Assembly (NCBI GenBank): GCA_977020255.1
Contig: CDROCS010002342.1
Span: 310,001-374,000 of the forward strand
Reading direction: 5' to 3'
DNA length: 64,000 nucleotides
Source: Obrimoposthia wandeli
Taxonomy: Eukaryota
Under the pieces are notes generated by a model. It had not been told where the DNA came from and searched no databases. It worked only from the letters and a program-made list of their open reading frames with translations. The translations under genes and the position numbers were made by a program. Shown piece after piece: positions 16,310 through 63,459 of this stretch; position 1 is the stretch's first letter; each line of letters starts with the position of its first letter.

Positions 16310-17846
16310 TGTTGGGGTTTCTATATGAAACTAGATCCAACGTGAGTTCTTTATCAATCGGGCTTGCAGTTGTTCGTGGCCTATTTAAATTTTTCTTGCC
16401 TGTCTCAATATCTAATCTGAAGGTTTAGTGTAAGGTGTCGTGGGAGATGTGTAAGGAGTTGTGTGCACAGGGTAATGGAAAATTTCCCTTATTGTGGTGT
16501 AGTGGTTAGAGGGTTGATATTTGCCTGATTTTAGGTGGTGTATTCTAAGTAACACTGCTTGATTGTAGGAAAATTTTATTCGTTAGCTTACTCGAACTAC
16601 GTTCCTAAATATTACAACAACTAATCCTATGTCACTTCCCTACTTCACACAATTTTAATTAATCGATTTTAATCGTACCTATTAATTTTACAAGTTTCTA
16701 AATTCGGTGAAATTTGCTCTAACCTTTAGGGTCTAGTCCAAACTTCGGATGTACGAAAATTAACGTACTCGAGATTACTTGAAATAAAACTTATCCAAAT
16801 TACTGTAGATCAATATTGACAACTTCGGTTTTACTTATTAAATTTATCGTTAATCGATATCATTGAAATGTTTTTATCTCTCAAATCAATTGAACCAAAC
16901 GCTTTTAATTTATCAAAATCAATTGAACAAAATGCTCTTTACAATTTTCAAAATCAATTTAACAAAACGCTTTTAATCTCTCAAAATCAATTTAATTAAA
17001 CGCTTTTTATCTCTCGCCCTTCTCACCTTCCTTTAGTCCGTGGTATGCGTTCGTCCGTCTGTGAAGTCTGGTCTTTAGTACAGCTGAATTCCTTACGTTT
17101 GTTGGTCTTCCTTCAACTTCTGGAAATCAGAAATAACAACTTCTCTATTTAGGATTTGATTACCTTTCTCCTTGACGACTTGTGGCGATTTTAATTTTTT
17201 GGAACTGAGCACTTTCTAAACAAATTCAATTTTCAGGAATAATTCAACTTCTATGGTAATCAAAATAAATTTCTTTTTACTGAATTCTTTACCTCGACTC
17301 TATTTAATACTTCTGGAAATAATGTGACAATTTTCAGACTATTCTAGAACAATCAACTTCTGATTTCAGTTTCTCAATTCTTACGCTCAATTTGCCTCAA
17401 GTTGCACGCGTGATTGTGATGGATCTGACTCGGAAACTTCCTTTAAGTAATTTTTCCTAAGTGCTTTTCCTGGAAAGAGTAGATAATTTCCCTTAACTAA
17501 AAATCTTCTTACCTCCGGTTGATTACTGACTGGAGACGCTAATGGATAATGACTGGAGACGCTAATGGATTATTGGCTTCCTTTTTCTTTAATTACTCTT
17601 GGTTTTCGTTAATTACACTCTGTACTTTTTGGGCCCTTTTATAACTTAAACTTTCCCTTATATACAACACATCATACACTTGACCTCTTCAAGGTCTTAA
17701 AATACTTTTCGATTTTATTTCCTCCATTTTTATTCTAATTGAAAATTCTATTAAATTTTTTATTCTTTTAGCCTTGCTTTCAAGGTTTTATTTTCATATA
17801 TAAATAATTAATTATTTCTATAAATCCTAAAATCCTAATCCTAACA
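16310..17846. mobile_element. Family A solo-LTR-like element A1 (subfamily beta), nested in an older family A copy
   Basis: TGTTGGGGTTTC...CCTAATCCTAACA; TSD CTTT/CTTT. Confidence 0.9.
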
Positions 17847-17849
17847 CTT

Positions 17850-19070
17850 TTACTTTTCCAATGTAACTTTTCTTGTTTATATAACTTTTCTTTTTTCGAT
17901 ATAACTTTTCACTTTCTATAATGACCAAACTTACAAAATTCTTACGTACTTTCTAAATGATCAATTACAATTACATTGATCCAAATTATTATGCTTTTTT
18001 TTATCAATAGTGATTACAAATACACTGATCAAAATTATTACACTCTTTTCTAAATGATCAATTACAATTATAATGATCCAAACTATTATGCTTTTTATCA
18101 ATAGTGATTACAAATACACTGATCAAAATTATTACACTCTTTCTAAACGATCAATTACAAATATAATGATCCAAATTATTACGCTTTTTTATCAATAAGC
18201 AATTACAAATACACTTTTTACTACATTCTCTCAAATCACTCTATTATTAAAAATTAATTGTCCGGTAGGTCCACAGATTCCGGCTATTCTATATTAAGTT
18301 CCTCGTGTCTTGGTTGTTAACTCAATCAGGACAGATTCCCTCTAATTGTTCACTCCTGTTATCTGGCGGTTCCGTCTAGTTTGTCTGGCCCCTTTTTTGT
18401 CCTGTATAACCGAAATTAAATTCGTTTTTTCACGACGACGGATCTCTATATTTTTTGCTCTAATAAGTTAATTCTCACTTCTCGTAGTCCTGGATTTAGC
18501 TACTTTTTGGATATTCAATCAATTTCTCGAGAGATTATTGGCTTTGTTTTTTGTGCAATTTTCTTTTTGTCGATTTTGCTTTTATACATCTACCTTAAAT
18601 AACAATTTATCTACTCCACTTAAGCTAACTGCTCTTACCATCATCTGGATGGATGCCGGCTGTTTCAGTTCGCATGAGTCTTCAGACAGCACTTAGTTCT
18701 GTCTCGGATTTCTGTCGGCTGGTTCAGTTCCCAGCGAGCGTAGCTTCTTATAGTTCTGGATTATTCTTAATTGATATTCAACTTCGATTTCTCTTTATTG
18801 GGATTTGTATTTGCCTTCGCACGAAACTTTTCTTAATTTTATTTTTTGTCGATTTTCGTAAGTTGTAATTTTTTGATTTTTACTTAATTTGACTTTAACT
18901 TTCCAATATATCACGCAACGCACATGACCTCTTCAAGGTCCTAAATTATTTTAGTTTAGTTGAAAACAATTTTATTATTTTTTGTTTTGTTTAACCTTAA
19001 TTCAAGGTTATACTTTTTTCTTTTAAATAGTCGATTTTATTTTTAATTTTATTAATTCCCAATCTTAACA
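17850..19070. mobile_element. Right part of an older family A copy interrupted by A1; left end not located
   Basis: Has minus-strand donor (18638), TATA (~18905), both palindromes, ends ...ATCTTAACA; tandem repeat at ~17950-18210. Confidence 0.7.
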
Positions 19071-19364
19071 ATAGGTAATTATTCTCGTTGTCTTTCTAAT
19101 TTATCTCCGATCCAAACAAAGAAATTTGTCTGTCTCATTTTAAATAGCTCTTCTTTGTGATTCTTTTGTTTAAGTATTCTAAGTCGTCTGTGTTGCTTCA
19201 TTCAATTAGGTATCTACTGTAAGTCCGTGAATAGTACGGTTTAGATAAGTGTGATTCTATAATACAGTTTTTACTTTGCCAATTTTAAAAAAAAATTATT
19301 AATTTATCAATGTTTTTAAATTTACAGTAAGTTCTTGTATAAAACGGCTTTTAACTTTTGATTA

Positions 19365-19644
19365 TATATATGTTACAGTCAATCTGTGAAATCAGCCATT
19401 TCATGAAAAGGCTAAAAAATTTCAGCCAATCTGTGTAATGATGAATAGTATAGTTTATGATGTGGATCAGTTGAATAAGTAGCCGACGTCGGATGAAACT
19501 GTATCAACAGTAGCCAAATCTGTCATCAACTTATTCAACTGATCCACATCATAAACTATACTATTCATCATTACACAGATTGGCTGAAATTTTTTAGCCT
19601 TTTCATGAAATGGCTGATTTCACAGATTGACTGTAACATATATA
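19365..19644. repeat. Foldback element: 116-bp perfect inverted arms, 48-nt spacer
   Basis: 19365-19480 is the reverse complement of 19529-19644; flanked by TA runs. Confidence 0.93.
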
Positions 19645-19880: not shown

Positions 19881-22582
19881 TGTTGGGGTTTCTATATGAG
19901 ACTTATATAGATCCTCTTGAATGCGGAGGGCCCCAACGTGAGTTCTATAGAAGCAGGTCTTAAAGTTGGTCGTGGCCTACTTAATGTTATGGTTGCCTGT
20001 ATCAATTGCTTATCTGAAGGTGTTTGTTTTGATGTCTCTTAATCTGAAGGGTTTAGAACAATGCTTTCTAATGTATTAAATCGTTTATTGTTAACACACT
20101 AGACTAAAACGAAACAATACGTTTACGTACGTATTTTCTAAAAAGTTGTAGTAAAATTCCTAAGACTTCTGAAAGTCTCTACACCAGTGGGGATGAACCA
20201 CGTATCGATTTTAAGTTTAGGGTTGGTTGGTCACTAGAGTCTTGACTCTAAAAATGAGAGTAACTTTAACTTTATAGATTTTGCAGAGCTGTTGCTCTAA
20301 AAATAGGGAAGGAGTTTAGATAGGTTTTAAGGTAGTTTTACAGAATTTTGTAAGATTCAATCTTTAAATTAATATCAGAAAATTCAAAATGTTGATCAAT
20401 TTCAGTAAATCCAAACTTTAAATTAATATCGGCAATTCAAAATATAATTCAATTTCACTAAGTTCAACTTTAAATTAATATCGGCAATTCAAAATATAAA
20501 TCAATTTCACTAAGTTCAACTTTAAATTAATATCGGCAATTCAAATATAAATCAATTTCACTAAGTTCAACTTTAAATTAATATCGGCAATTCAAAATAT
20601 AAATCAATTTCACTAAGTTCAACTTTAAATTAATATCGGCAATTCAAAATATAAATCAATTTCACTAAGTTCAACTTTAATTTAATATCGGCAATTCAAA
20701 TATAAATCAATTTCACTAAGTTCAACTTTAATTTAATATCGGCAATTCAAATATAAATTAATTTCACTAAATTAAATTCAAAATGTTAATCAACTTCACT
20801 AAATTCAACTTTAATTTAATATCGGCAATTCAAATATAAATTAATTTCACCAAATTAAATTCAAAATGTTAATCAACTTCACTAAATTCAACTTTAATTT
20901 AATATCGGCAATTCAAATATAAATTAATTTCACCAAATTAAATTCAAAATGTTAATCAACTTCACTAAATTCAACTTTAATTTAATATCGGCAATTCAAA
21001 TATAAATTAATTTCACTAAATTAAATTCAAAATGTTAATCAACTTCACTAAATTCAACTTTAATTTAATATCGGCAATCCAAATATAAATTAATTTCACC
21101 AAATTAAATTCAAAATGTTAATCAACTTCACTAAATTCAACTTTAATTTAATATCGGCAATTCAAATATAAATTAATTTCACCAAATTAAATTCAAAATG
21201 TTAATCAACTTCACTGCTCAGCAGTCCCACTCTGCCTCTCACATCGCTCCCGTCTTCAGTTCCTCGATTTATGGTCCACTGAGAGCGGTTACTAATGGTC
21301 CGGAAAACTCCGCGGATTGAGGGGATGCGCTGCGATTGAGCTACTGCGGATTGCTGTGATGCCTCTGATCTAGTTCACTTGTCCTGGTAGTTTCCGTGGC
21401 TACTTTGCTGTCCGATTGCTGGTCTGGTGGCGCAGTAACGAGTTTGCTGGAGAGATGGCTCGATCGGAATCCTTCTATTATATCTATTAAATTTGTTGGG
21501 AATTTGCGTGATTTACCTCCTAGTTTCTTCTGTCTTCTTCTAACGATTCTTGAAATCGGCGAGATCCTACGAATATTCCGCTTGTTGTTTCTTGAAATCC
21601 TGGTGCGACGGCAAACTGCGAGCGATAGATAACTTGTGGGCGACTGCTACGTTGGCGAATTTCTTCTCGGAATTGGCAATTTCTTCTCGGAATTGGCAAA
21701 CTGCGAGCGATAGATAACTTGTGGGCGACTGCTACGTTGGCGAATTTCTTCTCGGAATTGGCAATTTCTTCTCGGAATTGGCAAACTGCAACTTCTGATA
21801 ACTCTTCTTCTCTAGCAAAATGGTAAAATTGTGGCGACCGCGACATTGGTGAACTGCTATTTATATTCCACGATCGATTTCCAGGTTGGCGCACGGTACT
21901 GCTGGCAACTGCAACTTCTGGAGTTGGTGTGTCGATCAACTGCTATCGACGCTCTGATTCTCGGAATTGGCGAACTCCTGACGCTAATTGCTTTTGCTGC
22001 GGCGCGAGTTGATTGACCTGCGGAGATTCGTTTCTCTCGCTGGTCCGATCCTGACGATGGCTGTTGCTGGCTCGATGCTAGTTGGCGCGATGATGACGAA
22101 TCGATTTGTTGCGGCGCTGTGGGAACTAATTAATTTCCTGTCAAGAACATGTCAGCTGGCACACAATCTAAGTGCACTTACTTTGATGCTGTAATTGATG
22201 CGGCTGCAGCTGTTTTGGGCTCCCACGATGACTTACACGATATTTCGATTTTCTAGAGATCCTAAATTGAGGTCACGAATCTAACTTCTGATTTTCTGGT
22301 CTAATTTGATGTTTGTTTCGCAGATCTTAATTGATGTCTTGCTATCTTCTATTTTCCGTTGATGATTATTATATTTTTTTGGGGCCCTTTTGTTTTGATT
22401 TAACTTAATATATACTCATGCATTACACACGACCTTCGTGGTCCTTTAATATTTATTTACTATTTAACAATTTATTTTTGATATAAAATTAAAATTTATT
22501 TAATTTTAACCTTGCTTTCAAGGATTTTCATTTTACTATAAAATCAATTTATTATTTAATTTTTCAATTCCTAAACCTAACA
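19881..22582. mobile_element. Family A element A2 (alpha), 2.7 kb
   Basis: TG...CA termini; TSD ATAT/ATAT. Confidence 0.92.
20405..21215. repeat. Minisatellite in A2: ~52-bp unit then derived 83-bp unit
   Basis: Unit starts at 20460/20512 (52 bp) and 20801/20884/20967 (83 bp). Confidence 0.9.
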
Positions 22583-23294
22583 ATATTATTATTCTTTTAG
22601 AAGCATTTAATTGTTTTTTACATTGATATATATGGTAAAATCGGTTTCAATTATTACTACAAATGAGAAACAAAGTATATTCTAAACGGAAGTGTTGTTT
22701 CCAACAACATGGGTTGTATTAGGATTGTTAATTATGCTGTGATCAGTCTCTTTGGGACTGAGATTCCTCGGATTGTTTCCCATTGATGTGTTGGGGTTTC
22801 TATACGAAACTTGGTACAGATCCTCTTATGTGCGGAGGGCCCCAACGTGAGTTCGAATAGAAGCAGGTCTTAAAGTTGGTCGTGGCCTACTTAGTGTTAT
22901 GGTTGCCTATCTCTTGTACTATCGGAAGGTATTTGATTTGATGTCTCTTATTCTGAAGGGTGCAAAAACAACTTGTTCTAATGTAGGAAATTGTTTATTG
23001 GTAATTCACGTAACTAAACACAACAATACGTATTTCTAAAAAGTATGGTAAAATTCCTAAGACTTCTGTAAGTCTCTACAACAAGTGGGGATGAACCACG
23101 TATCGATTTTACGTTCGGGGTAATCGAGATTTTAGAGTTATTCTTCTTCCTAGGTTGGTTAATCTATAACGCAACTCTCTTAAATTTCTTCGACTTGACT
23201 TCTTATGTGTGGATAAAGTTTCTTGAATGGGTAACTCTATCTGTTGTGTATTCGACCACGAATTGTCCACTGTGGGCAATGATTCTCCTAAAAA

Positions 23295-23700
23295 CCTAAT
23301 TGTCAACGATGACAATGAAAACTTGCTTCGAATTGTCAACTAGGACAATGAGTGTTTGTTCCGAATTGTCAACTAGGGACAATGAATGTACCGAATTGTC
23401 AACTAGGGACAATGAGTGTTTGTTCCGAATTGTCAACTAGGGACAATGAGTGGACCGAATTGTCAGCTAGGGACAATGAATCTTATGGGAAAAAACTCGT
23501 ACAACTCCTAATTGTCAACTGGGGACAATGAATATGATGGACAATCCTAATTGTCAACTAGGGACAATGATTTGGTTAAAGAGGCAAATCCTAATTGTCA
23601 GCTAGGGACAATGAATATGTTTAAAATATGTTACAATTTCGAATTGCCAACAAGGGGCAATGAATGTATCCTAATTGCCAACTAGGGGCAATGAATGCTC
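23295..23700. repeat. Array of 11 dyad repeats AATTGTCAACTAGGGACAATGA with variable spacers (in A3)
   Basis: Read directly; inter-repeat spacers about 5-30 nt. Confidence 0.9.
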
Positions 23701-23821
23701 TAGTCGGTGTTCTTACCTATGTTACTCGAGATTCCTGTAGTACTGGTGAGTCTGGATACGATCGTCTTCAATCAACTGCAACTTCTTTCGAGCTTTTCAA
23801 ATTTGGATACTGATTCAATCT

Positions 23822-24205
23822 TTAGACACTTTTCAACTTTAGACTTTTCAAATGTGGAATAACTTTCTCGGCAATTTGGCTTTTACTTTAGACACTTTTC
23901 AACTTTAGACTTTTCAAATGTGGAATAACTTTCTCGGCAATTTGGCTTTTACTTTAGACACTTTTCAACTTTAGACTTTTCAAATGTGGAATAACTTTCT
24001 CGGCAATTTGGCTTTTACTTTAGACACTTTTCAACTTTAGACTTTTCAAATGTGGAATAACTTTCTCGGCAATTTGGCTTTTACTTTAGACACTTTTCAA
24101 CTTTAGACTTTTCAAATGTGGAATAACTTTCTCGGCAATTTGGCTTTTACTTTAGACACTTTTCAACTTTAGACTTTTCAAATGTGGAATAACTTTCTCG
24201 GCAAT
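23822..24205. repeat. 66-bp tandem repeat, ~5.8 identical units (in A3)
   Basis: Unit starts at 23822, 23888, 23954 and onward. Confidence 0.92.
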
Positions 24206-25483
24206 TCTAAATTAATTTAATTCAATTTAATTCACCAACTTGACTTACTGGCTTTTCTGCTGGTTCTATTTTGTCTGTTGTGTCAACTTGGGTTATGAGT
24301 CAACGACTTATATACTCGATTATGGGTTGTCAGTCAACTCTTGACTGCTTCTGTTCTTCCGGGATTATGGGCTGTCAGTCAGCAATATTGGACAGCTGAA
24401 ATATATCAAGTACGGCAGCTGAAAAAAAATCAAGTTAGCTTACTGCACGAAAATGTGCTTACCGTTTCTTTGATTGACGTTCGTAATTTTCTAAATTGTT
24501 CCCTTTTGCTTTTTGCACTTTTGGTTAATTAACTCTAAACTTATATATCCTACACTATACACGACCTTCGTGGTCCTCCTAATTTTTATCCTAACTTCCA
24601 CTAATTTTAATTTTGAATCTAAAATTAATATTTAATTTAATTTTCAACCTTGCTTTCAAGGATTTTTATTTTAGTATTTAATCGACTAATTATTTTAATT
24701 TCTTAATTCTTAAACCTAACAGATGTGTGGGTACCAAGTTGCTGATGGTTCTCGTTGACGAGTTGAGTCGCTACCGCTTGTACAGTCTTGATACCTCCTA
24801 CGTAATGATTTGTTGCTGGGTTTCTTTTTAACTGTCTCTGCTGGTTCTTATATAATAGTTTATATCACCAGTTCTTATATAATGTATGGCTTCTTGTTCT
24901 TCGACTCGTGTAGTCACTTCCCAGAAGCGACAGAATTGCAAAAATAATGTAGTGATTAGGTTGGATCGATAAAATTTAATATATTATCTGTTGATTTAAT
25001 AAACCTAAATGTGAAATGCTAATTTGCATATAGCGATGGAATGATGTACAATCTAGATAATTATTATTTTTTATTTACTGTTAATAAATTTTAGTCTTTT
25101 TAGGAAGTTTAAAACGTACTTTTTTATTATGTGTTTGTGCTCCCCTAAAATAATTAACCACTTAACGTCTCTGATATGCTTTTTCACTTTATGGATGGTT
25201 GATATTATAATATTGAGCTAGCAAGGCTGGATCGTTTGGAGGATGAGGCGAACATTAATTTGTTTGTTGATTGTACAAAATCGGCCGCCATTCTGTTGAT
25301 AACTACTGGGTTACTGCCGAAAGGTAATTGTTACAATTGTTTTCACGAAATTGTCGCTACTGGTCGGAAATCATCAGGACAACTTTGTGTAAAATGAAGA
25401 AATGTATGCTCATGTGATTTTGTCGTCGTATCATGAAATGAATCAGTTTTTGTCAATATTAGTCAGGACACAGTTGATTCATA

Positions 25484-27346
25484 TGTTGGGGTTTCTATAT
25501 GAAACTGTATTCTATTATATATCCTCTTTAGTGGAGGGCCCCAACGTGAGTTCTATAGAAGCAGGACTTGTAGATGTTTGTGGCCTACTTAATGTTATGC
25601 TTGCCTGTCTCAATTCTTATCTGAAGGTTTGTTGTTTTGTCTTAATCTGAAGGGTTTAGAACAACGCTTTCTAATTGTAGGAAATCGTTTATTACTAAGC
25701 ACACCAAACTAACACGAATTAACACGTCTAAGTACGTTCTAAAAATTACAATAAAATCCCTAAGACTTCTGTAAGTCTCTATACAAGTGGGGATGATCCA
25801 CGTATCGATTTTAGTTTAGGGTTGGTTGGTCACTAGAGTCTTGACTCTAAAAAATGAAGGCAACATTAACTTTATAGATTTTTAAGTCAACTTTAATTCT
25901 TCAAAACTTTATGATAACAATAAATTCACTGTCAAAATCTTTCTCAAAAACTTTATAGACTTTTAATTCAACTTTTAATAAATTCACTTTCAAAATCTTT
26001 CTCAAAAACTTTATAGACTTTTAATCAACTTTTAATAATTTCACTGTCAAAATCTTTCTCAAAAACTTTATAGACTTTTAATTCAACTTTTAATAAATTC
26101 ACTTTCAAAATCTTTCTCAAAAACTTTATAGACTTTTAATTCAACTTTTAATAAATTCACTTCCAAAATCTTTCTCAAAAACTTTATAGACTTTTAATTC
26201 AACTTTTAATAATTTCTCACCAATCCGATGGGTATGTCTGCGTCCGGTGCGAGTTTGGTCCACGTGGTCCGTTTCCCGTACGATGCGGCGAGTTGGCTTT
26301 CGCTCCGATGTCTCTTGTTTGAGATCCTCCTCTGCTTCCCGATTGAGGGCTGATTCTGATTCTTTAAATAATTGATGCTTTTTATTCACAGGTTTCCTAC
26401 CTGTTCTGTCTTCTTTCCTGTTTTCGCTGCTTGATATTTCAAATCTGTGATTCGGATTCTGGGCTTGGCTTTGGTAGCAGAGCGTGGTTGGAAACACAAT
26501 TTCTGGGATTCTGCTTTTCAGTTCAATCTGTTCAAACTTGGGAGCAGAGCGTGGTTGGAAACACAATTTCTGGGATTCTGCTTTTCAGTTCAATCTGTTC
26601 AAACTTGGGAGCAGAGCGTGGTTGGAAACACAATTTCTGGGATTCTGCTTTTCAGTTCAATCTGTTCAAACTTGGGAGCAGAGCGTGGTTGGAAACAATT
26701 TATGTGATTCTGCTTTTAATCCGTCGTGCAAATGTACTCTTCTTTTATCCTCGAGACTCGATGACGAATTGCTGGCCTCTGCACAAATCCTAACTTCTTC
26801 TAATGCAATTCAATTAGTAATGCGACTAAAGCACTTACTACTAGGCAATTGGCTGCTGGCGGGTTCCCACAATATTTCCCGCGCTAATAGCTCGGTAATG
26901 GATTTCTCTTCTTACGGCAGCTGCTTGGCTCCCACAATATTTTCCTGCGCTAATGGTTAATAGCACTTAGCCTAATGGATTTTCTTACCTTGATCCTGGA
27001 TGGCTGGCGTAGTTCCCAGCGTCAATGATTCTTAATCAACTTCTTCTGTTTTTCTTCTAATAATTCTTAATCAGCTATTTAATTATCTTCTGTCTTTCTT
27101 CTAATTTGTCTTCTTTGTTTTTTGTGGCTATATCTTTTTTGGGGCCCTTTGCTTTAGTTTTAACCTCTATATATATTCACGCATCATACATGACCTTCGT
27201 GGTCATTAATATTTAAATTACCATTTTAATTTTCAATAATTTAATTCTAATCTAAACTTTATTTTAATTATGACCTTGTTTTCAAGGATTTTATTTTACT
27301 ATAAATTCAATTAATTATTTAATTTTACCAAAACCTAATCCTAACA
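25484..27346. mobile_element. Family A element A4 (alpha) with ~58-bp x5 and 67-bp x3.4 tandem repeats
   Basis: TG...CA; TSD CATA/CATA; 67-bp units at 26477, 26544, 26611, 26678. Confidence 0.92.

Positions 27347-27962: not shown

Positions 27963-27967
<5 letters not shown>

Positions 27968-28015
<48 letters not shown>
27968..28015. repeat. (TA)n microsatellite
   Basis: Direct reading. Confidence 0.95.
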
Positions 28016-46970: not shown

Positions 46971-47496
46971 TGTTGGAGTTATTTCACTAGTTAGGTTAAC
47001 ACCAGATTTTATGAGTTCTTAACATAATAGATCTTATTGAAGGACCTACCTAAATAACTAAAATATTAATGTTTTTTCTAACAAATTGTGAGTAAATATC
47101 TCTACAGTAACTCGCTATTACTTATTTACGATAAGCAAAACAATTTAAATGATTACTACTTATTTATGATAAGCAAAACAATTTAAATGATTATTACTGA
47201 TGCTCTATTGATTTTAATAATAGGGTAGATTCCTTGGTCTATATAACTTCAAAATGCAAGTTATTCTGAACTACTTCTATAGGGTTTTATCAAAACACGT
47301 TATTATAACCCACTTTTATTTAACACAATAATATAAGTGGTATACAAGCAATAGGGTAGTACAATAGTCAGTTATTTAGATAAAATTAAATTAAATGTGT
47401 AAACTTTAATACAATTTTTATAAAAGATTACTTCAATTAATATTCAAATTCAAGACGATATAAATTGTATCAAGTATAAAACTTATTAGTTTAACA
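46971..47496 (+). mobile_element. Family B short LTR-like element (~0.5 kb)
   Basis: Collinear with 61240-61408 + 63169-63459; TGTTGGAGTTATTTC...TTTAACA. Confidence 0.7.
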
Positions 47497-51424: not shown

Positions 51425-54019
51425 TGTTGGGGTTTTCTAAATATTTACCTTAGAATCCTCGTATGGAGGACCTCAACGTGAGTCCTATAGATATAGGTAT
51501 TATTGATGTTCTAGGCTACCTAGTCTGATTTGTTTGAAGGTGTATTTATGCTGTGTTTGGAATTATATATAGGTTATTGGATAATTTCCCAATAAGTTAG
51601 TGTAGTTTAATGTTGGACTGATTTGTAAAGCAATTGAATTAGTTTGGGTAAGCCTAAACCAAAAATGTGTAATTTTTGAGCCAGATGACTTCTGCAAATC
51701 GATTTTTCCGGTGTATGTGATGGTTTGTTTTTGGACAGATTTGGTCTTGGGTTTCCTCCCAGTATTTTAAATTAATTAACTTTCAGGAGCGTAACGTGTC
51801 TTCAAAAAAAATAGTTGTATTTATTCAACATTTTATTCTATATAAGCAGTAGGAAACTAACACTTAGCGCACATATGCAAAATTAGCAAAACAACAAACG
51901 TACAAATATAACAACTAACAACTTCTTATAACAACGTCTTGTGTCACAGAATAATATGTAATTTTCATTTCCCCGTAATTTCGTCCCTTTTATTTATTTT
52001 AATTTTTAATATTCAGGATTATTAAAATGTCCTTTGTCAGAACTATAAATGTTGGGGTTTCTATATGAAACTAGATCCTCGTATGGAGGCCCCCAACGTG
52101 AGTTATATAGCAATAGCGCTTACAGATGGATGTGGCCTGTTTAGATTTTCCTTACTCATCTTAGTTTCAAGTCTGAAAGTTTTTTGTATTAGTGTATGGT
52201 GGATTGTGGACAGAGTTGTGTGCACAAGGTACTAAAGGGTTCCCTTATTGTAGTGTGGTGTGTCGAGGGATTTATAGTGCCCTACATCTATATGTAGTTA
52301 CCTGAATTAATCCAGTCAACTGTAGGAAAGAACTATATTATTATACCAAACTAAAAATATTTCTAACAGTTTACAACGTAGGGCGTTTAATAACAATTAC
52401 CTTAGTCACACCGAAAAATCGAAGAGCTGACCACCTATTTGATTTTACTTCTTACTCAAGTCCTCCTAGTCAATCAAAATGTGTTTGTCAGTCCAGTCCT
52501 CTGACTAACAAAACAATTTTGCTTCGAACACAATTTAATTGATTTCCAACGATATAGCGTGTCGTTGAAATACAAAATTTCCCGTAATAATTTTAGATTA
52601 GTTCGGTGTCGGCTATTGGGCGTTTAATCAAGTTATTTTGTTTGACTGGTTCAAAATGTCCGTAGTTCGATTAGCCCAGGATTTTCAACGGTAACAATAT
52701 AACTTCTAACTTCAGTTATTGTATCTCTGATTTGTAGTTTATATAAGTTAACTTTCTAAAATATTTGATTAAACTTTCGCTTAAATTTAAGATGAATCCA
52801 ATTCTTAATTACTCAAATGTGTTTCACTTTATATAGGTTTAATTTTCAAATGTTCAATTAACTTTGATTAAAATCAAGACAAATTCGATTCTTAATTACT
52901 CAAAAAAAGGGTTCAATTTATATGGTTTCAAATTCTAAATTCCGTACAGATGATTTGGAGGTCCTGGTGGCTTGAGTCCTCGTCCGTATTTGTTTCGTTG
53001 GCTGGTGGGATTATGCTGTCCGCTCTAGCTCGATTTGCGGTCCTCAAATCGACAGGGCTTCCTACACGATTCGGTCTCAGTTGTAATTTGCGTGGTTCGT
53101 GTTTCTTATCTTGCTGGTGGATCCTGTTACTGCTTCTTCTACTTGTCAACTCTGCTTGGTTGTTTCAACAAATTCTGTTTCTTCTCTTTCATGGGTTTAA
53201 ATCGATTCGAAATTGGTAAATTATGTACCCGTTCGCGACTTTTAGTCCTAATTCTGCCGGTGTAATTAATTTATGTTTTATCTTCTAATATAGAGCCGTA
53301 CAGCAGCTCACAGTTTGTGTTTGTCTATTATCAGACGATTTCTTCCAAATCCATTAATCGGATCTCTGTAGGAATAATTCGTTAATGGATTTTCTTGTCT
53401 ACAATTATACAATCTGTTCGAGATTCCTGGAATGAATAACTGAGCCTCAAATTAATGCATAGATGTCGCAATGTTAATACTGACTTGCTGCAAATATTAC
53501 TAAATATATTATAATTTAAACATGTTTCTTCGTCTTTATTTTATTATTCCTGGAATTACTTATTTCACTTACTGTTTTCTTAATCGGTTGCCGGCTGTTC
53601 TGTTCTCAGCAGCTGGATTCTTCTCACGAATGGCAATTGATTTTCTTGCACTGGCTTCTTAATTAACACTGGCTGCTTCTCGGTTATTGTTAATTTTTTT
53701 TGAATTCCTTGGGCTATTTTAGTAATTTTAAAATCTCTTATATACCTGCACAAGAAACATAACCCTTCAAAGTCCTAAAATTATTAAATCCCATTTTATT
53801 TAATTTAAATTTTTTTAGTTATTTATTTCACTAATTTCACTTTCTTTAACCTTACTTTCAGGGTTATATTTTCTATATATATATATATATATATTAATTA
53901 AAATATTAAAAAAATATTAATTAAAAAATATTTCATTAAATTCGTCCGTTTTTGGACCCATTAACACATTGATTTCTTTATTTTATTATTCTAATGGATT
54001 TTGCTGCGTGAACCTAACA
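51425..54019. mobile_element. Family A element A11 (gamma, degenerate) hosting A12
   Basis: Left TGTTGGGG; right AACCTAACA at 54019; TSD AATG/AATG. Confidence 0.7.
52050..53936. mobile_element. Family A element A12 (beta) nested in A11
   Basis: Left end intact after TAAA; right end degenerate, TAAA at 53937-53940. Confidence 0.8.
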
Positions 54020-54757: not shown

Positions 54758-56191
54758 TGTTGGGGTTTCTATTTGAAACTCTTAAATAGATCCTTGTATG
54801 GAGGCCCCCAACGTGAATAGGGGGAGTTCTATAGCAATAGGGCTTGCAGTTGGTCGTGGCCTATTAAATTTTTCTTACCTGCCTCAATTTCTAATCTGAA
54901 GGTTTTGTTTTCGATCTTTGTTGTGGAGATATATAAAGAGTTGTGTGCACGGTTACTGGAAAATTTCCCTTATTGTGGTGTAGTATATGGTGGTTTGGTA
55001 CTTGCCTGGTTGTAGGGGTTTGTTCAATTCAACACTGCTTAAATGTAGGAAATCTTTATTCTCTAAACTCACTCTAACTAGGTTCCTAAAAATTACAACA
55101 ATTAGTCCTATGTCACTTCACTAAACATCACACAAATGGGGATGTCTTGACGTATCGATTTTAATCGGTCTAACAAATTTACAAGTTCTTTACTCTTTAT
55201 TTCAAAATACAATTTCTCTTTTAGTCAAAACACAATTTATCTTTTAATCAAAACGCAATTTATCTTTTTTCTTTAAATTCAAAATCTCTTTCAGTTCTCA
55301 TTTTAAACTCAAAATCTTTAGAACCCAACCCTTTCAGTTCTCACTTTAACACTCTTTACTTTAAAATCAAAATCTTTCAGTCCTCTCACATTTTCTTTGG
55401 AGCGTCTGTTGTCTTTCTGGTATGTCTGAAAAGCAGAATAATAACCTCTTTAATTGGCCTTTTCTGTCGATTCCAAGATGAAAAAACTCGTTTATATCTC
55501 TCACCTTTTCTCGGCTCGTCTGTTTATTTCACAATCTTCTTTTATGAGCAAATCTTCTTTTCTTTATCTTTGAGTCAATCTTCTTTTATAATTAAATCTT
55601 CTTTTTTGTGTTAAGCCACTCTTCTTTTATAATTAACTCTCTTTTGTGTGTTAGGCAACTCTTCTTTTATAAGTAACTCTCTTTTTTGTGTTAAGCAACT
55701 CTTCTTTTATAAGCCTAAATAAAACAATTAATTTACACTTAGTTTAATGCGCTAACCTTGCAGTCTGGCTACCGGCTGTTGGTTCCCTGTTCGTTCTTCA
55801 CTGCTAATTCTGGATAAAGTCGTAGTGGCGCTTAAAGGGTGCTAATGGATATTTGTAGTTACTTTTGGGTTTCGTCTTCTCTATACTCTGTTGCTTTCTC
55901 CCAGATTATCTTAATTGACTGCCTTGTATTTGTCCCACTATTCTGTACTCTGTTAATTGATTCTAATTTTCGTTCTGGTAATTTCTGGGCCTTTTATTTT
56001 ATTCCAACTTTCTTATATATAACGCAAGAAACACGTGACCTCTTCAAGGTCCTAAAATACTTTTTGATTTTATTTTATTTAATTTTAATTTCTATTTTAA
56101 TTTTCTTTTCTTTTAACCTTGCTTTCAAGGTTTTATTTTCTTATATAAATAAATTAATTATTTTCAAAATATTAAAATCCTAGTCCTAACA
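54758..56191. mobile_element. Family A element A13 (beta); no matching TSD
   Basis: TGTTGGGG...CCTAGTCCTAACA; flanks CAAA vs AATT. Confidence 0.85.
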
Positions 56192-56830: not shown

Positions 56831-57290
56831 TAGAATTCAAAGTATTATTACGACCTTGGTGGCCTGCCCTTGCTTTTTAAGTTATGCTTTCACCATCGTC
56901 GTGGAACAGCTTACAATTTCTTCTTGCTTATTTGTTGATACAACAAACTGCAAACACTTACATTTCTACAGATATTTCAAAGCAGCATCTTGCAGTCCGT
57001 ACGTTTTGCTTAATTTTCATATATTTGATTTCCCCCACAATTTTATTTACAGTATTCTAGATATGTCCCATTTAACACAAATTATTCAACATCTGCGTTC
57101 ATAATTATTTAAAGAGATACTTATAAATATTTAAATTCATTTTGGAGGTCAAAAAGACTTTTAATACTTTTAAAATCATATGATAGTTTAATAAGTAAAT
57201 ATTAATATCACTAAAATATAATAAAACTCATGGGCTTTGATAAAAAGATTAAGAGCAGTATAATTAACCTAGTGTTAATATGCTCTAGAG

Positions 57291-59623
57291 CAGGCATGTC
57301 AAACATGCGGCCCTCGTCAAGCATTGATGTGGCCCACGCATCGAATGTTGATTTAATAGCTAAATTATATAATATTGTTCTTCAATCGCGTATGTATAGT
57401 AGTTAATATCTATCACACGATCGAAGCATATAATGTGTTCGTGCATATATACATTTATATTAAATCAAGTGAGTAATCATCGAATAAAATACATAACACC
57501 GTAAATTTTCGATGAAGAGGCGGTTTCGAAGATAAGTCAAATTTTTAAAATAATATTTTTTTATTAAAAAATAGGTATTGTTTTAATATTTCAATTTTTT
57601 TATTTGTGATCCCAAAATGACTAATAATCCTCCAACAAAGAAAATGAACGAAGAAGGGCGACTGTTTCAAGAAAAGTGGGAATTGCAGTATTTTTGCACA
57701 ACAGTAGACATGAAGATAATTTGTTTGATTTGTAATAACAGTATCTCCACACCCAAAGAATACAATTTGAGAAGACATTACACAACGAATCATCAATCTT
57801 GCGATAAATATGAAGGCGCAATGCGTGTATCAAGACTCGAGGAACTTAAAGCTAACTTGGCACAGCAACAGACTTGTTTTACGAAAATTCAGAAAGATAA
57901 TGTTGCTTCTGTTACTGCAAGCTATGAAATCAGCCTAATGATCGCTATGAGTGGTAAATGTTACAATGACGGAGATTTCGTAAAGATATGCCTTGTAAAA
58001 ACAGCTGAAATTGTAAGTCAAGAGAAAGTAAACGTATTCAAGAATTTTTCATTGACCAGAAACACTGTTGCTGAACGAATTGATGAAATGTCAGATGATT
58101 TTAAACTACAATTGAAGGCTATATCATCGACTTTTGACTATTTTTCTATTGCCATTGACGAGACTGCTGACATTACTGGAATAGCACAGCTTGCTGTCTT
58201 CATTAGGGCATGCGACAGTGAATTTCATATATATGAAGAACTGATTGAACTTGTTCCTATGTATGACACCACAACAAGCCAGGACATCTTTGAGAAAGTC
58301 GAGCAAGTTCTGCATGATTATGAACTTGATTTGAGTAAACTCGCATGCTTATCTACAGACGGTGCTGCGAATATGGTTGGTAAGCATAATGGTGTTGCAG
58401 CCAAGTTACGAACAAAAATAGAAAAATTGGATTCAGATGCGGCATTTACACATTTTCATTGTATTATCCATCAGCAAAATCTGTGTTCAAAAATTTAAAA
58501 ATTGAATCACGTCCTTTGCTTTGTCACAAAGACAGTGAATTTTATCAGAGGCCGTGCTCTCAACCATCGTCAATTTAGCCAGTTGTTGAAAGATATGGAT
58601 AATCAGTTCACGGATGTCCCATTCTTTACAGCAGTCCGCTGGCTATCATGTCACAAAGTGTTGAAAAAATTTTATTTATTGAGACAAGAAATAATAGTGT
58701 TTTTGGAGATGAAAGGTCAAGACACAAATGAAATGAAGGATGAAAGTTGGCTCCAAGATCTAGTTTTTGCTGTAGATATTACTGCCCAGTTAAATGATCT
58801 TAATTTCAAATTACAAGGCATAAACAAACTCATCACTCAGTTGTATGATGACATCAAGTGTTTCATTACAAAACTGAAGTTATGGAGGTCACAGTTGTCA
58901 AACGAAAATTTAGTTCATTTTCCAACATGCAAAGAGCTGATAAACACTGCCAATAATGAGTCTGTTCGTAGCTTCGCTAAATATGATAATCACCTAACAT
59001 TGTTGTTAAAAGAATTTCAAAAAATATTTCGTGATTTCTCATCTTTTGAAAACAAGTTTGCTTTGTTCTCAGCACCATTCGCCTTTGATGTCGCCAATGT
59101 AGAAGAAAGCCTGGATATAGAACTGTTAGAAATGCAGTCGTACTCTGCTCTTAAAGCAAAGTATCTTGAAGTCGGGATTCAAAATTTCTTTTCATACCTT
59201 CCAAAAAAATTAAAAAATTTCAGAAAGTTTGCCACAAAGATCATGGCAATGTTTAGTTCTACCTATGTGTGTGAACAGTTATTTTCATTCATGAAAGCTA
59301 CAAAAACATCTCATAGAACAAGGCTGACAGAACAGCACTTGTTATCACTGATCAAAGTGGGAACTGCTCAGGCATTTAAGCCAGACATTCCAAAAATTGT
59401 CAATCAAAAAAGATGTCAAACCTCAGGTCAAAAAAAGTAAAGATGATGAAAACGTTACCAATAAATAAACATTTATAATTTTTATACATTATGTTTTGAT
59501 GTGAATAAAATTTTATTTTTTGTCAAACAACTTTTATTTTTTATCATTAAATTTTAATCCGACCCGCGAAAGCCGTAAATATTCGAAATCCGTCCCGCCG
59601 GTGATTTGAGTTTGACACCCCTG
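57291..59623 (+). mobile_element. Full-length hAT (Charlie/SPIN-like) DNA transposon, 2333 bp
   Basis: TIRs CAGGCATGTCAAAC / CAGGGGTGTCAAAC (12/14); 8-bp TSD CTCTAGAG on both sides. Confidence 0.95.
57617..59440 (+). pseudogene. hAT transposase (GTF2IRD2/SPIN-like) with one in-frame stop at 58496-58498
   Basis: BED-like CLIC...H...H; IDE, STDGA, CIIH and STYVCEQLFS catalytic motifs; the two ORFs are in the same frame. Confidence 0.93.
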
Positions 59624-59833
59624 CTCTAGAGTACAATTGACTCAGATTACTTTCAACCCAGTACGCTTAAACCGTATAGGAATTACCAATAATACCTGAT
59701 TATCAAGATTGACGGTAACATTTTTATTTATTATTACAACTCTATTTTCTAAATAAAGCATATTTTAAATATTCACAACATCACAAAGCTGAGTAAAACG
59801 TCGATTTTACTAGTGCTACAACTTTCGATTTAG

Positions 59834-59952
59834 GTTTCTACTACTGTCTCAACATGATTCTGATCACGATGTCCACATTCTGCTCGGTTGTTGTGATCAA
59901 TCTCTATTTTCGAGGGGACAATCGTCGAAAGGTTCCCTCATGGCTGAAAAAG
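59834..59952 (+). CDS. nAChR exon, TM3: (G)FYYCLNMILITMSTFCSVVVINLYFRGDNRRKVPSWLKK
   Basis: ttag acceptor, AAG|gtgg donor; phase 1 matches the exon ending at 14631 (G+GT = Gly); typical TM3 and VP.WL motif. Confidence 0.93.
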
Positions 59953-60551
59953 GTGGATGTCTGAAAACCTTTCTTCGTTTAATATAGACACAAATAGCCA
60001 ATAAGGGAACTAATCGAAGGTGGAAATTACAGCTTTATATAATAAATTAAAATTTTCTTATTTAACCTCGATCAAGTTGGTTAGCAGAATAGTAGTGTTA
60101 GATTGGGAAAAGTAAAAATTAAAAAATAACAAAAATATTAAATCATTATATTATAAGTAATTGTGTTAAATAAATATAAGGTTAAATATTTTCATTTCTT
60201 ACATTTTTTTAACGAATAAATAAAAGTTTAGAAAAAAAGATCTAATAGGATATTAAATTTACTGAAGTTTGTAATTTCCTCTGGAGATAATTTTGTTACA
60301 TTTAAAAATTTGCAAATTTCGTATGCAATTCGATTCGTGGTGATTGTTTATGAGTTATGTGAGGCGCATAGTAGTAATACGCTAAAATTTATAAATGTAT
60401 ACGTTAGGGCACGTTTTTTGTTAAAATTTAATAAAACTTTATTTGACTTTTTATAATCCCTAGAAGTTAGGATTGTTTTGAAACATCATACTATGTTTGA
60501 AAGATTGAAAATTTGGTGCTTATTAATTTTATTTCCCCCTCCAAAATGCAG

Positions 60552-60741
60552 GTGATGGTGATAATTGGGCGGTTCATGCTCATGGATATAAATAACCTCA
60601 AGGAGACTAAGGAGAAAATCAACATAATCAAATCTGAGATCAAATACAACCGCAAATTCTGTAAGAAAGTCGGCTTCAAACTGGGCTCTGACCAGAGTCT
60701 CTCCCGATCCCCACAAGGAGAAACTGAGACCGTAGGCCAAG
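60552..60741 (+). CDS. Probable nAChR cytoplasmic-loop exon (VMVIIGRFMLMDINNLKE...ETVGQ)
   Basis: ttccccctccaaaatgcag acceptor; phase 0 continues WLKK|VMV like the MX helix; 3' boundary CAAG|gtcagc is tentative. Confidence 0.7.
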
Positions 60742-61239
60742 GTCAGCAGTTTTTTTATAAACTTCTTTATTTTAAAAAAAACTGCATGATTTGTCCGGTT
60801 CAGAACCTCAGTTCCTATCTGTTTCTAAAATTCACAATTTAAGCTTTATATATGTATCTAAAATATTTAGTATTTTATATTAAAATTTTTGTTTTAAATA
60901 ACCGTGAAATTTATAAAGGTTGCATTTCAACTCAAACATTAATTCAAGTTAATTAGGCAAATTTAAATATCTTATCACGACAACTATAATCTAATATAAA
61001 AAAAGTCGAAATATTGCTGATTTATTAAAGTTTAAGATTATTTTAATCTTTTTTAAAAATTAAATAGAATATTAAAAACTTCTTTAATCGATTAATTTAA
61101 GTATATGTCGCTACAAAGAGAACTTTCGCTACATGAGTTATGTCACAGTCGGTATTATATACTTTCTATTTTTGCTAGAGTTTTCTAAATACAATATTTA
61201 TTATTTGACTTATTGATACCTAATTTATAATATTTTTAG

Positions 61240-63459
61240 TGTTGGAGTTATTTCAATAGTTAGGCTAACTTCAAACATGTGAGTTCTTTACATAGTAGGA
61301 CTTACTGAAGACCTTACTCTAAATTGTCTCAAGTTTGAAGATTATTTATTCAAACGTTACGCAACCAAAGTCTGAGTAAATATCTTTACAGTAACTCCGT
61401 GTTACTTATGTTGGGTTTTCTATTGAAACTTATAATTCTCGTATGGAGGCCTTAAACGTGAGTTCTGTAGCGATATGGCTTACAGATAGATGTGGCCTAT
61501 CTGTCTTAGTCTCTGAATGTTTTCGTGCTGTGTCAGAGTCTGTGTTCAGGATAACGTGAGGGTCCTTAAAACTATTGTTGTGTTTTGTATGACTAATTTA
61601 ATAAGCCGGCTAGGCCAAATTGGATTTTAATTCAAAAATGGTCTGGCAATACCAAGATCAGGAATAGGCAAAATAAGCTGGAATCAATCGACGTCGATGA
61701 TAATCCTCTGAATGTACCAGGGCTTAAATTATCGCCTCGTTGGTTAACTCTCGGTTTAAGGGGTGGTTATTGGCTCTCTAAACTAGCGAGGTTTCAACAC
61801 TTGTTGTGATACCAAAACGGGGTTTTCAAAAGGTTTAATCGTTTAGTATTGAAATGATTTATTTCAGTACTAAACTTTGTTATTTAACAGAAAACATTTA
61901 CACTTCTAAAAATCGTAAGGGTGACACTTGCTACACTTTTATAAACTAACATATTTGTATTTTTTCTCAAAATTAACTGATCAATTCATTAAAATTTATG
62001 GATGGTATAACTATTAAGTTTACGTCAACAATAACTTTCACTAAACTCTTCAGATTATAGCTTTACTTCAAAATCAATTATATTACACCTTAATTTTACT
62101 TTAAAATCAATTCTAATACACTTTAACTTTACTTCAAATCAATTCTATTTCACTTGAACTTTAAATCTCAATTAATTTATGAACTCTTTACTTCGTTTTA
62201 CCCACCGATTCTTTAATTTTGTTGTCGAATTTCGATTGATGAACTGTCGTCCGTGCTTCCTCTGATAGTCCTTGATGATTTCGGTTCCGTATCTTCAGAT
62301 ATTCCGTAGTGGCTCGTGATCCTTCGTCTAAAGGTTTGGTCTAAAATCTTTGTCCTTAAAAATTGTGCTTTTAACTATTGGTGTTCAAACATTGTGAAAT
62401 GATTGCTTATACACCCGGTTAGTTTAGTCCGGACGTCGGCCACTTCCGATTCGGCGACCAATGCCGAGGCAGAATAATTGTTCACTGATTGATCAGGTGG
62501 TTAAATCCTGAGGCCAGATGTCGGCCGATTATAGAATTTGCGTATACCACCCAACCGCCACGTTCGGCCCAATCAGTCGAATTCTCCTGGTGGAAGGCCA
62601 GGTAATTGCCAGGTCGATGTTGGATGTTACTGGCTGCGGTGTAGCTTCTGCTCGTGCGGAGGGTGATGCCATTGCTACCACTCGCCATAATTGGCCGATG
62701 CCGTGTGTCGATTAATAATCGTTCATCTCCTTCCACTGCACTCTGGCGACTAAATCCCGAGGCTGGGTGTCACTGGGTACTCGATGGTCGGTGGCCGCTT
62801 GGGGAAACTCTGTTGGAAGGCCGGATGTCGGCCATTACTGTGCGGCTGGAGTATTCAGCTAGTTGCTGATTGCCACTGCGATATCTATATCGCCCGCCAT
62901 CGGAACTTACAATTGTTGATGTGGACTCCACTACAAAATATGTCCTTTTCCTGAGACTTCAAATTTTAATGAATACTTTTTTCTCGTCATTTTTTAACAT
63001 TGTTCTACCTTACATATAAACACATTTTCATGACCTTCAAGGTCTCAAATTAATTAGTTTTTTAATAAAATGTATTTTAAATAATTTTTAAAAATGTATA
63101 ATATATATTAAAAGGTTATTTCTTGCCTATATTTATATTTATTTTAAACCTTCCTATTTTAACACTTACTTACGATAAGTAAAACAATTCAAGTGATTAT
63201 TCCTGACGCTATCATGATCTCAGAAATGTTTTTGGGCTTTATAGCCTATATAAGATTACTGTGAATGATTTGTAATCTAGGCCTACTTAAACACGTAATA
63301 TAAAACCCTTTATTTATGTAATACAATCATATAAGTCGTATACAAGCAATATGGTACAATAACCAGGTAAGTAGGTGGTATTCAAAATAAAATGCATTAG
63401 GTTCAAATTAGTTCAAATTAGTTCAAATACAAGTTTTATATAAATGAGAAAATTTAACA
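61240..63459 (+). mobile_element. Family B element split by A14
   Basis: Flanks of A14 join into a sequence collinear with 46971-47496. Confidence 0.75.
61409..63164. mobile_element. Family A element A14 (gamma) with GC-rich interior
   Basis: TG...CA; TSD CTTA/CTTA. Confidence 0.9.

What the first reader, a model, noticed from the sequence alone, without database searches (positions are those of the whole stretch)
16310..63164. A family of 14 modular 1.1-2.7-kb solo-LTR-like elements with conserved ends and a swappable interior
Seen: all begin TGTTGGGGTTT (minor variants) and, except the degenerate A12, end ...(C/T)TAACA or CCTACCA. Eleven have perfect 4-bp TSDs (CTTT, ATAT, GATG, CATA, ATAT, TTTT, TACG, CTAT, TTTT, AATG, CTTA). 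About 350 bp left and 250 bp right are conserved, interiors are largely unrelated, and three subfamilies coexist. None is attached to a recognisable PBS or PPT. Known: TG...CA with 4-bp TSD is typical of Ty3/Gypsy integrase products, and planarian genomes carry very large LTR elements. Inference: either extremely efficient solo-LTR formation, or the unit itself is mobilised.
Basis: partly seen in the sequence, partly recalled or inferred. Interest (0 to 1): 0.75.

Follow-up and report, generated by a model that had tools for sequence, protein, structure and literature searches.

The report
Solo LTR pile-up in one intron
A 47-kb intron of a neurotransmitter-receptor gene holds fourteen leftover end-pieces (solo LTRs) of one diverse retrotransposon family, all pointing the same way, which is a clean but ordinary pattern.

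Summary
Thirteen delimited units plus one nested, degenerate unit (1.1-2.7 kb) and a 15th right-end fragment all lie on the + strand. They start TGTTGGGG-like and end (C/T)TAACA or CCTACCA. Eleven of the 13 delimited units have perfect 4-bp duplications (chance about 2e-22). One unit (E14) also has an unfilled paralogous site. About 330-520 bp on the left and 110-290 bp on the right are shared. Interiors are copy-specific minisatellites plus unique DNA. Left and right blocks sort into the same three subfamilies, so I see no module swapping.

No gag, pol or integrase domain was found in the ORFs tested, and no internal direct repeats, PBS or PPT. Terminal inverted repeats are at most 7 bp.

New context: E1-E13 probably sit in one roughly 47-kb intron of a + strand nicotinic-type receptor gene, and E14 in the next intron. 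As they lie, the units show the host transcript 17 AATAAA hexamers, against 57 on the other strand.

Best reading: these are solo LTRs of a Ty3/Gypsy-type family, filtered for one orientation by selection on the host transcript. "The unit itself moves" is not excluded, because one window gives no genome-wide census. The pattern is well documented here, not novel in kind.

The parts
16310..17846 (+). E1, solo LTR, subfamily C, TSD CTTT
18789..19070 (+). Ex, right-end fragment of a 15th copy ending in the canonical terminus. The interior-like tandem repeat at 17934-18215 may belong to it.
19881..22582 (+). E2, solo LTR, subfamily A, TSD ATAT; 52/83-bp minisatellites at 20351-21215
22789..24721 (+). 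E3, solo LTR, subfamily A, TSD GATG; 66-bp x 5.9 array with 100% identical copies
25484..27346 (+). E4, solo LTR, subfamily A, TSD CATA; 58-bp and 67-bp arrays
32202..34109 (+). E5, solo LTR, subfamily A, TSD ATAT
40789..41898 (+). E7, shortest solo LTR, subfamily A, TSD 3 of 4 (TGTG/TATG)
42701..44275 (+). E8, solo LTR, subfamily A, TSD TTTT
44492..45813 (+). E9, solo LTR, subfamily B, TSD TACG
46913..47420 (+). Unfilled paralogue of the DNA into which E14 inserted (a different repeat family). CTTA occurs once here and twice around E14.
47513..48847 (+). E10, solo LTR, subfamily C, TSD CTAT, ends CCTACCA
48900..50857 (+). E11, solo LTR, subfamily A, TSD TTTT; 46-bp x 12.6 array
51425..54019 (+). 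E12a, solo LTR with a subfamily-B-like start, TSD AATG; interrupted by the nested E12b
52050..53935 (+). E12b, nested copy, closest to subfamily C. Its right end is degenerate (AT-rich low complexity), so the end coordinate is approximate.
54758..56191 (+). E13, subfamily C, canonical termini but no TSD (CAAA / AATT)
61409..63164 (+). E14, solo LTR, subfamily B, TSD CTTA; boundaries confirmed against the unfilled paralogue
571..849 (+). Host gene exon: Cys-loop receptor ligand-binding domain (Pfam profile positions 34-91)
7198..7548 (+). Host gene exon: ligand-binding domain (profile positions 93-209)
12821..12955 (+). Host gene exon: TM1 to start of TM2 (PF02932 positions 1-42; PDB 6uwz_C residues 213-263)
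59839..59955 (+). Probable host gene exon: TM3 (PF02932 positions 61-99, below the Pfam cut-off; PDB 6uwz_C residues 283-321, E=3e-4)
57283..59631 (+). hAT DNA transposon in the same intron, with 22-nt inverted terminal repeats. Its transposase frame is interrupted by one in-frame stop. It is a neighbour, not part of the LTR family.

Best explanation
The units are solo LTRs of one old, diverse LTR-retrotransposon family whose integrase is of the Ty3/Gypsy type. Shown: each unit is a separate integration event with TG...CA ends (TGTNR at both ends), a 4-bp target duplication and no coding capacity. The copies belong to three subfamilies whose two conserved end blocks flank a fast-evolving, minisatellite-rich middle. 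Inferred: each insertion arrived as a full-length element, and recombination between its two long LTRs removed the interior, leaving one LTR between the intact duplication. Shown (the distal exon only as probable): E1-E13 lie in one intron of about 47 kb of a + strand nicotinic-type receptor gene, and E14 lies in the next intron. Inferred: the uniform orientation is a survival filter. Only copies whose host-sense strand is poor in poly(A) signals were tolerated in the transcript (17 AATAAA on the host-sense strand against 57 on the other). The LTRs' own polarity is not settled. I favour the - strand as their sense strand (about 65%), which would put them antisense to the gene, as is usual for intronic LTRs.
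For: Termini and TSDs: with p about 2e-22. A filled-versus-unfilled paralogous site confirms E14's exact ends, and CTTA is duplicated only at the filled site. T at -2 (9 of 11) and A at +2 (8 of 11) form a symmetric target preference, as expected of a dimeric DDE integrase. TGTNR is the terminus pattern of most Gypsy LTRs (PMC2836005). No Pfam gag, RT, RNase H or integrase hit came from the 40 longest ORFs or from 131 + strand ORFs outside the elements. No reading frame is shared across the left blocks. Flanks are unique DNA, so the copies did not arise by duplicating the locus. Left and right blocks give congruent subfamilies. Nearest-neighbour identity is at most 94% on the left and 88% on the right, yet 47 of 48 TSD positions still match. 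So post-insertion decay is about 1-2% per copy, and most divergence arose before insertion. Host exons follow the order of the protein on the + strand. All 14 copies share one orientation, p=1.2e-4 under random orientation. AATAAA counts are 17 against 57. Solo LTRs and ERVs in introns are known to show a strong orientation bias attributed to transcript termination (PMC1794541 and PMC3517506). For - polarity: every element has at least 2 AATAAA on the - strand, 5 of 13 have none on +, and E3 has neither AATAAA nor ATTAAA on +. AATAAA on the - strand sits at one aligned column in 9 of 14 copies. The better conserved block would then be R-U5.
Against: No paired LTRs, PBS, PPT or gag-pol of this family were seen, because the window holds none and the source genome could not be searched. 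Membership in the LTR-retrotransposon class therefore rests on end anatomy. The TM3 exon match is weak (18.7 bits, below the Pfam cut-off of 28.1; PDB E=3e-4), and the TM2 remainder was not found. So a single gene spanning the cluster is probable, not proven. Some features favour + polarity instead: a TATATA at one column in 9 of 12 right blocks, lying downstream of the repeat arrays, and 13 G-U-type against 4 A-C-type variants in the predicted stems when read on +. An orientation share of 14 of 14 needs strong selection: p=0.04 if 80% of survivors share one orientation. The absence of copies from the first two introns (p=0.008) is not explained by an orientation filter.
Confidence: 0.8

Rival explanations
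1. The 1-3 kb unit is itself the mobile entity: a non-autonomous element carrying only integrase or transposase recognition ends (Ginger-like or LTR-derived) and moved in trans as DNA.
For: All 14 copies are single units and no internal region is seen anywhere in 64 kb. TGTNR ends with 4-bp TSDs are shared by Ginger DNA transposons. The copies are very diverse while their TSDs are intact.
Against: Ginger elements have 40-270 bp terminal inverted repeats and target CCGG or RTATAY. Here the inverted repeat is at most 7 bp and the TSDs are varied AT-rich 4-mers. Single units in introns are what solo-LTR formation predicts. There are no excision footprints, and no transposase or integrase gene in the window.
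Confidence: 0.07
2. The cluster reflects where and how the element integrates, not which copies survive. Either integration is tethered to a local feature, such as chromatin on earlier copies, with a fixed polarity, or the interval is a one-strand small-RNA (piRNA-type) cluster that collects insertions in one orientation.
For: There are 13 insertions in one intron and none in 11.6 kb of the other two introns (p=0.008). All share one orientation (p=1.2e-4). Some neighbours lie only 52-216 bp apart. Only one insertion is nested.
Against: The gaps between neighbouring copies look roughly exponential to my eye (not formally tested), and the flanks share no motif beyond T(-2)/A(+2). No tRNA or other RNA gene is present to act as a landmark. 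DDE integrases are not known to orient insertions relative to gene bodies. No expression or small-RNA data are available. This reading is compatible with the units being solo LTRs.
Confidence: 0.1
3. The array is a long-unit tandem or segmental duplication, and the apparent TSDs are coincidence.
For: Same orientation and regular spacing of 2-3 kb in places.
Against: There are 11 different perfect TSDs (p about 2e-22). The DNA between units is unique. The copies differ by 6-45% while the TSDs are intact. E14 has an unfilled paralogous site.
Confidence: 0.01

Closest known systems
Solo LTRs of Ty3/Gypsy (Metaviridae) retrotransposons with long LTRs, such as plant Ogre and the planarian Burro/GYPSM1 group
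   Same: TG...CA ends with the TGTNR pattern, a short terminal inverted repeat, a 4-bp TSD, kilobase-long non-coding units with tandem repeats, and a setting in an AT-rich genome rich in LTR/Gypsy elements.
   Different: No full-length partner was seen. Identity with Burro or any named family was not tested, because no reference was available and fetching one was barred. The host species is not identified; the best named relative of the host exon is a flatworm protein at 59% identity.
Orientation-biased ERVs and solitary LTRs in mammalian introns (PMC1794541, PMC3517506)
   Same: Non-coding LTR units in introns all in one orientation, with the poly(A)-signal-poor strand facing the host transcript.
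   Different: The bias is complete here (14 of 14) and concentrated in one intron. The LTRs' own polarity is inferred, not measured.
Ginger1 and Ginger2 cut-and-paste DNA transposons (PMC2836005)
   Same: TGTNR termini and 4-bp TSDs produced by a Gypsy-integrase-like transposase.
   Different: The 40-270 bp terminal inverted repeats and the CCGG or RTATAY target preference are absent.
TRIM and LARD non-autonomous LTR elements (PMC4558846 describes a flatworm TRIM)
   Same: Non-coding, LTR-type ends, and dependent on an integrase supplied in trans.
   Different: Those elements carry two direct LTRs with a PBS and PPT between them. These units have no internal direct terminal repeats and no second TGTTGGGG-type start near the right end.

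Membership tests
Solo LTR of an LTR retrotransposon (Ty3/Gypsy type) | 5'-TG...CA-3' ends with a short terminal inverted repeat (TGTNR at both ends) | tested here: met
   The left end reads TGTTG and the reverse complement of the right end reads TGTTA (TGGTA in E10), in 13 delimited units. The pattern is described in PMC2836005.
Solo LTR of an LTR retrotransposon (Ty3/Gypsy type) | Target-site duplication of 4-6 bp directly flanking the unit | tested here: met
   11 of 13 are perfect 4-bp TSDs and one is 3 of 4; p about 2e-22. The unfilled paralogue of the E14 site carries a single CTTA.
Solo LTR of an LTR retrotransposon (Ty3/Gypsy type) | Non-coding unit, with no PBS or PPT attached | tested here: met
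   No Pfam hits in the element ORFs tested. No shared open frame. The flanks are a TSD followed by unique DNA.
Solo LTR of an LTR retrotransposon (Ty3/Gypsy type) | The same sequence occurs as paired direct repeats flanking PBS, gag-pol and PPT elsewhere in the genome | not testable with these tools
   The source genome is not in the searchable collections: the best protein match to the window's hAT ORF is 74%, and the metagenome pattern scan gave 0 hits.
Solo LTR of an LTR retrotransposon (Ty3/Gypsy type) | U3-R-U5 layout with a promoter and a poly(A) signal on one strand | tested here: inconclusive
   On the - strand, AATAAA sits at one aligned column in 9 of 14 copies. On the + strand, TATATA sits at one column in 9 of 12 and TATAAA in 8 of 12. 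Polarity is unresolved.
Ginger DNA transposon (non-autonomous copy) | Terminal inverted repeats of about 40-270 bp | tested here: not met
   Only 7 terminal bases are inverted-complementary.
Ginger DNA transposon (non-autonomous copy) | Target CCGG/CCGT (Ginger1) or RTATAY (Ginger2) | tested here: not met
   The TSDs are CTTT, ATAT, GATG, CATA, ATAT, TTTT, TACG, CTAT, TTTT, AATG and CTTA.
TRIM / LARD (complete non-autonomous LTR element) | Two direct LTRs within the unit, with a PBS and PPT between them | tested here: not met
   There is no left-right direct repeat within any unit and no internal second start motif, except the left-block duplication in E13.
Burro / GYPSM1 LTR of planarians | Sequence identity with the described LTRs | not tested
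   No reference sequence was at hand. Fetching a provirus-like element of an animal is barred, so the comparison was left out.
One-strand piRNA cluster | Dense strand-specific small RNAs from a long transcript with transposon fragments in one orientation | not testable with these tools
   Only the orientation part is seen. No expression data are available.

The most novel reading that the evidence does not exclude
The single LTR-like unit is a self-sufficient non-autonomous mobile element. It would keep only the two integrase recognition ends and a variable middle, be moved in trans, and insert with a local and directional preference. That would explain 14 same-sense single units from many lineages in one intron without any full-length partner.
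Probability: 0.07. Interest if true: 0.75.

Novelty: new member of a known kind. Interest (0 to 1): 0.25.

Why it matters
This locus records repeated retrotransposon insertion very cleanly. It has fourteen datable events from at least three subfamilies, intact target duplications, one filled-versus-unfilled site pair and a complete orientation bias, all inside the introns of one gene. It shows how transposon insertions can expand an intron by about 45%, and how host-transcript integrity may filter which insertions stay. It does not reveal a new kind of element. Its value is as a worked example, and as a starting point for a genome-wide count of solo versus full-length copies in this family.

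Tried and rejected
- Coding capacity: Pfam scans of the 40 longest ORFs (elements and gaps) and of 131 + strand ORFs outside the elements found no retroelement domain. A tblastn with ORFs of an unrelated contig that carries an RT also found nothing, though its sensitivity is low.
- Shared ORF in the conserved left block: none.
- RNA families and tRNA landmarks: none.
- Conserved RNA or DNA structure in the end blocks: short stems are predicted, almost without covariation, and the reverse strand of the right block gave no consensus structure. This does not settle polarity.
- Looking for the source genome: an exact look-up of the hAT ORF failed. The nearest hAT homologue with DNA (L001) comes from another organism and lacks the LTR family. 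A second homologue had no DNA available.
- Metagenome pattern scan with the 22-nt left terminus: 0 hits.
- Left part of the fragment Ex upstream of E1: not found.
- Shared short motifs in the interiors: nothing convincing.
- Reverse-oriented copies: none.
- The pattern hits at 35512 and 55011 were rejected as element starts.


Full report
**Observation**

The start motif occurs 16 times with up to one mismatch, always on the + strand, against 1.25 expected. A self-comparison of the window shows that from 16.3 kb to 63.2 kb the same two blocks recur: about 330-520 bp at the left of each unit and 110-290 bp at the right. They are 60-94% identical, always in the same order and strand, and nothing similar occurs in the first 16 kb.

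Aligning the right blocks gives a common terminus...CCTAACA, with CCTACCA in E10. With the ends fixed this way, 11 of 13 delimited units are flanked by perfect 4-bp direct repeats. E7 has 3 of 4, and E13 has none. Two random 4-mers from this region match with probability 0.0073, so 11 or more of 13 has p about 2e-22.

- E12b is nested in E12a and has a degenerate right end.
- A 15th copy is a right-end fragment ending at 19070.
- Two pattern hits are not element starts: 35512 is a chance match and 55011 is an internal duplication.

**Each unit is a real insertion**

The DNA between units is unique, so the array is not a duplicated block. E14 sits inside a copy of another repeat, whose paralogue at 46913-47420 is uninterrupted. 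The two flanks of E14 align to it separately at about 80% identity. The homology stops exactly at E14's first and last base. CTTA is present once in the paralogue and twice around E14.

Around the duplications there is a weak symmetric preference: T at -2 in 9 of 11 and A at +2 in 8 of 11, with p about 0.004-0.005 each before correcting for the 20 positions examined. This is the kind of palindromic target bias that DDE integrases leave.

**Anatomy**

Both ends follow the TGTNR pattern, which Bao and colleagues describe for most Gypsy LTRs and for Ginger transposons (PMC2836005). Only about 7 terminal bases are inverted-complementary. No unit has internal direct terminal repeats or a second start motif near its right end, so the units are not complete TRIM- or LARD-type elements.

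The middle of nearly every unit holds its own minisatellites. Periods are 13-94 bp and array identity is 74-100%. One example is a 66-bp unit repeated 5.9 times without a single difference, in E3. The rest of the middle matches no other copy.

Identity matrices for the left and right blocks give the same groups:
- Subfamily A: E2, E3, E4, E5, E7, E8, E11.
- Subfamily C: E1, E10, E13, with E12b and Ex as distant members.
- Subfamily B: E9, E14, with E12a distant.

I therefore see no exchange of modules. A conserved pair of ends with a hypervariable middle is what related LTR lineages look like.

No two copies are close relatives. Nearest-neighbour identity is at most 94% on the left and 88% on the right. 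Yet 47 of 48 duplicated target positions still match, which limits post-insertion decay to roughly 1-2% per copy. Most of the divergence therefore arose before insertion, so many distinct source lineages contributed.

**Coding capacity**

The 40 longest ORFs in elements and gaps, and 131 + strand ORFs outside the elements, gave no gag, protease, RT, RNase H or integrase match. The conserved left block has no reading frame shared among copies. No tRNA or Rfam family is present.

A Cys-loop (nicotinic-type) receptor gene lies on the + strand.
- Its ligand-binding exons are at 571-849 and 7198-7548.
- The exon for TM1 and the start of TM2 is at 12821-12955. It matches Pfam PF02932 positions 1-42 and residues 213-263 of PDB chain 6uwz_C.
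- An ORF at 59839-59955 matches the next part, TM3: PF02932 positions 61-99 and residues 283-321 of the same chain, E=3e-4.

The two pieces are consecutive, non-overlapping and in the right order. The simplest reading is one gene whose intron of about 47 kb holds E1-E13 and a hAT transposon, with E14 in the following intron. LTR DNA makes up 45% of that intron.

The TM3 match is below the Pfam cut-off, and the short TM2 remainder was not found, so this is probable rather than proven. The joined-exon search was left out.

**Orientation**

Fourteen of fourteen copies in one orientation has p=1.2e-4 if orientation were random. As the units lie, the host-sense strand carries 17 AATAAA hexamers in 23 kb, against 57 on the opposite strand. 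Every unit is T-rich on the + strand, with AT skew from -0.08 to -0.25, much stronger than in the surrounding intron DNA. Intronic ERVs and solitary LTRs are known to show an orientation bias ascribed to premature termination of host transcripts (PMC1794541, PMC3517506). A survival filter of that kind explains the uniform orientation without needing to know the LTRs' own polarity.

**Polarity of the LTRs**

This is unresolved.

For the - strand as sense:
- Every unit has at least two AATAAA there.
- Five units have none on +, and E3 has neither AATAAA nor ATTAAA on +.
- AATAAA on the - strand sits at the same aligned column in 9 of 14 copies, 201-298 nt from the end.
- The better conserved block would then be R-U5, the usual pattern.

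For the + strand as sense:
- A TATATA sits at one column in 9 of 12 right blocks, just downstream of the repeat arrays.
- A TATAAA sits about 50 nt from the end in 8 of 12.
- G-U-type variants outnumber A-C-type variants in the predicted stems, 13 to 4 by my count.

I put about 65% on the - strand, which would make the copies antisense to the gene.

**What remains unexplained**

The absence of copies from the first two introns (p=0.008 under uniform insertion) is not accounted for by an orientation filter. Neither is the tight packing, with some gaps of only 52-216 bp. These may reflect constraint near the 5' exons, a preference for chromatin formed on earlier copies, or a small-RNA cluster. 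None of these can be tested here. E13 lacks a duplication, which is consistent with recombination between two insertions, though that is not shown.

**Organism**

GC content is about 30%. The best named relative of the receptor exon is a flatworm protein (Heterobilharzia americana, 59% identity). Planarian genomes are more than 70% A/T, rich in LTR/Gypsy elements and have transposon-expanded introns (PMC11410931; PMC6431247). A planarian source is plausible but not demonstrated. The genome itself is not in the searchable protein collection.

Early on I ran one metagenome pattern scan with the LTR terminus. It returned nothing and fetched no locus. I therefore left them out and list them under referred steps. 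Comparison with Burro/GYPSM1 or with Repbase/Dfam could not be made.

**Verdict**

This is a real, cleanly delimited cluster of solo LTRs of a Gypsy-type family in the introns of a receptor gene. The "swappable interior" is subfamily divergence plus minisatellite turnover, and the uniform orientation is best explained by selection on the host transcript. It is a new member of a known kind, of modest interest.

Noticed in passing
window 571-849, 7198-7548, 12821-12955, 59839-59955 (+): Exons of a nicotinic-type Cys-loop receptor gene. The TM1 and TM3 exons are about 47 kb apart, with the LTR cluster between them. The exon for the end of TM2 and those beyond TM3 were not found in the window.
   Followed up: partly
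window 57283-59631 (+): A hAT DNA transposon with 22-nt terminal inverted repeats (91% complementary) and no clean 8-bp duplication. Its transposase frame is interrupted by one in-frame stop. It is 76% identical over 1.8 kb to a contig of a different organism (L001, GC 37%), and the best named protein hit is Trichuris suis at 74%. That spread across distant animals suggests horizontal transfer of the family.
   Followed up: partly
window 19365-19644: A 280-bp stretch that is 90% identical to its own reverse complement (a long palindrome, foldback or MITE-like), about 240 bp upstream of E2.
   Followed up: no
window 46913-47420 and 61186-61408 / 63165-63438: A second, unnamed repeat family present in two copies of about 80% identity. 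One copy carries E14 and the other is unfilled. The unfilled copy has a 38-bp tandem duplication at the equivalent point.
   Followed up: partly
flanks of the 11 units with perfect TSDs: A symmetric target preference: T two bases before the duplicated 4-mer (9 of 11) and A two bases after it (8 of 11).
   Followed up: yes
window 60501-60839 (+): A 113-aa ORF with a weak, sub-threshold match to NDC10_II (E=0.004). That domain is also related to Crypton-type recombinases, by my own recollection. It may be chance.
   Followed up: no
window 23820-24206: A 66-bp minisatellite inside E3 whose 5.9 copies are 100% identical, so either the array expanded very recently or the insertion is very young.
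   Followed up: partly
right blocks of all subfamilies, about 150-190 nt from the right end: A palindrome built on GACC(T)...(A)GGTC. Its loop differs between subfamilies while the arms are kept. It resembles paired nuclear-receptor half-sites or a short hairpin. No statistical support was obtained.
   Followed up: partly
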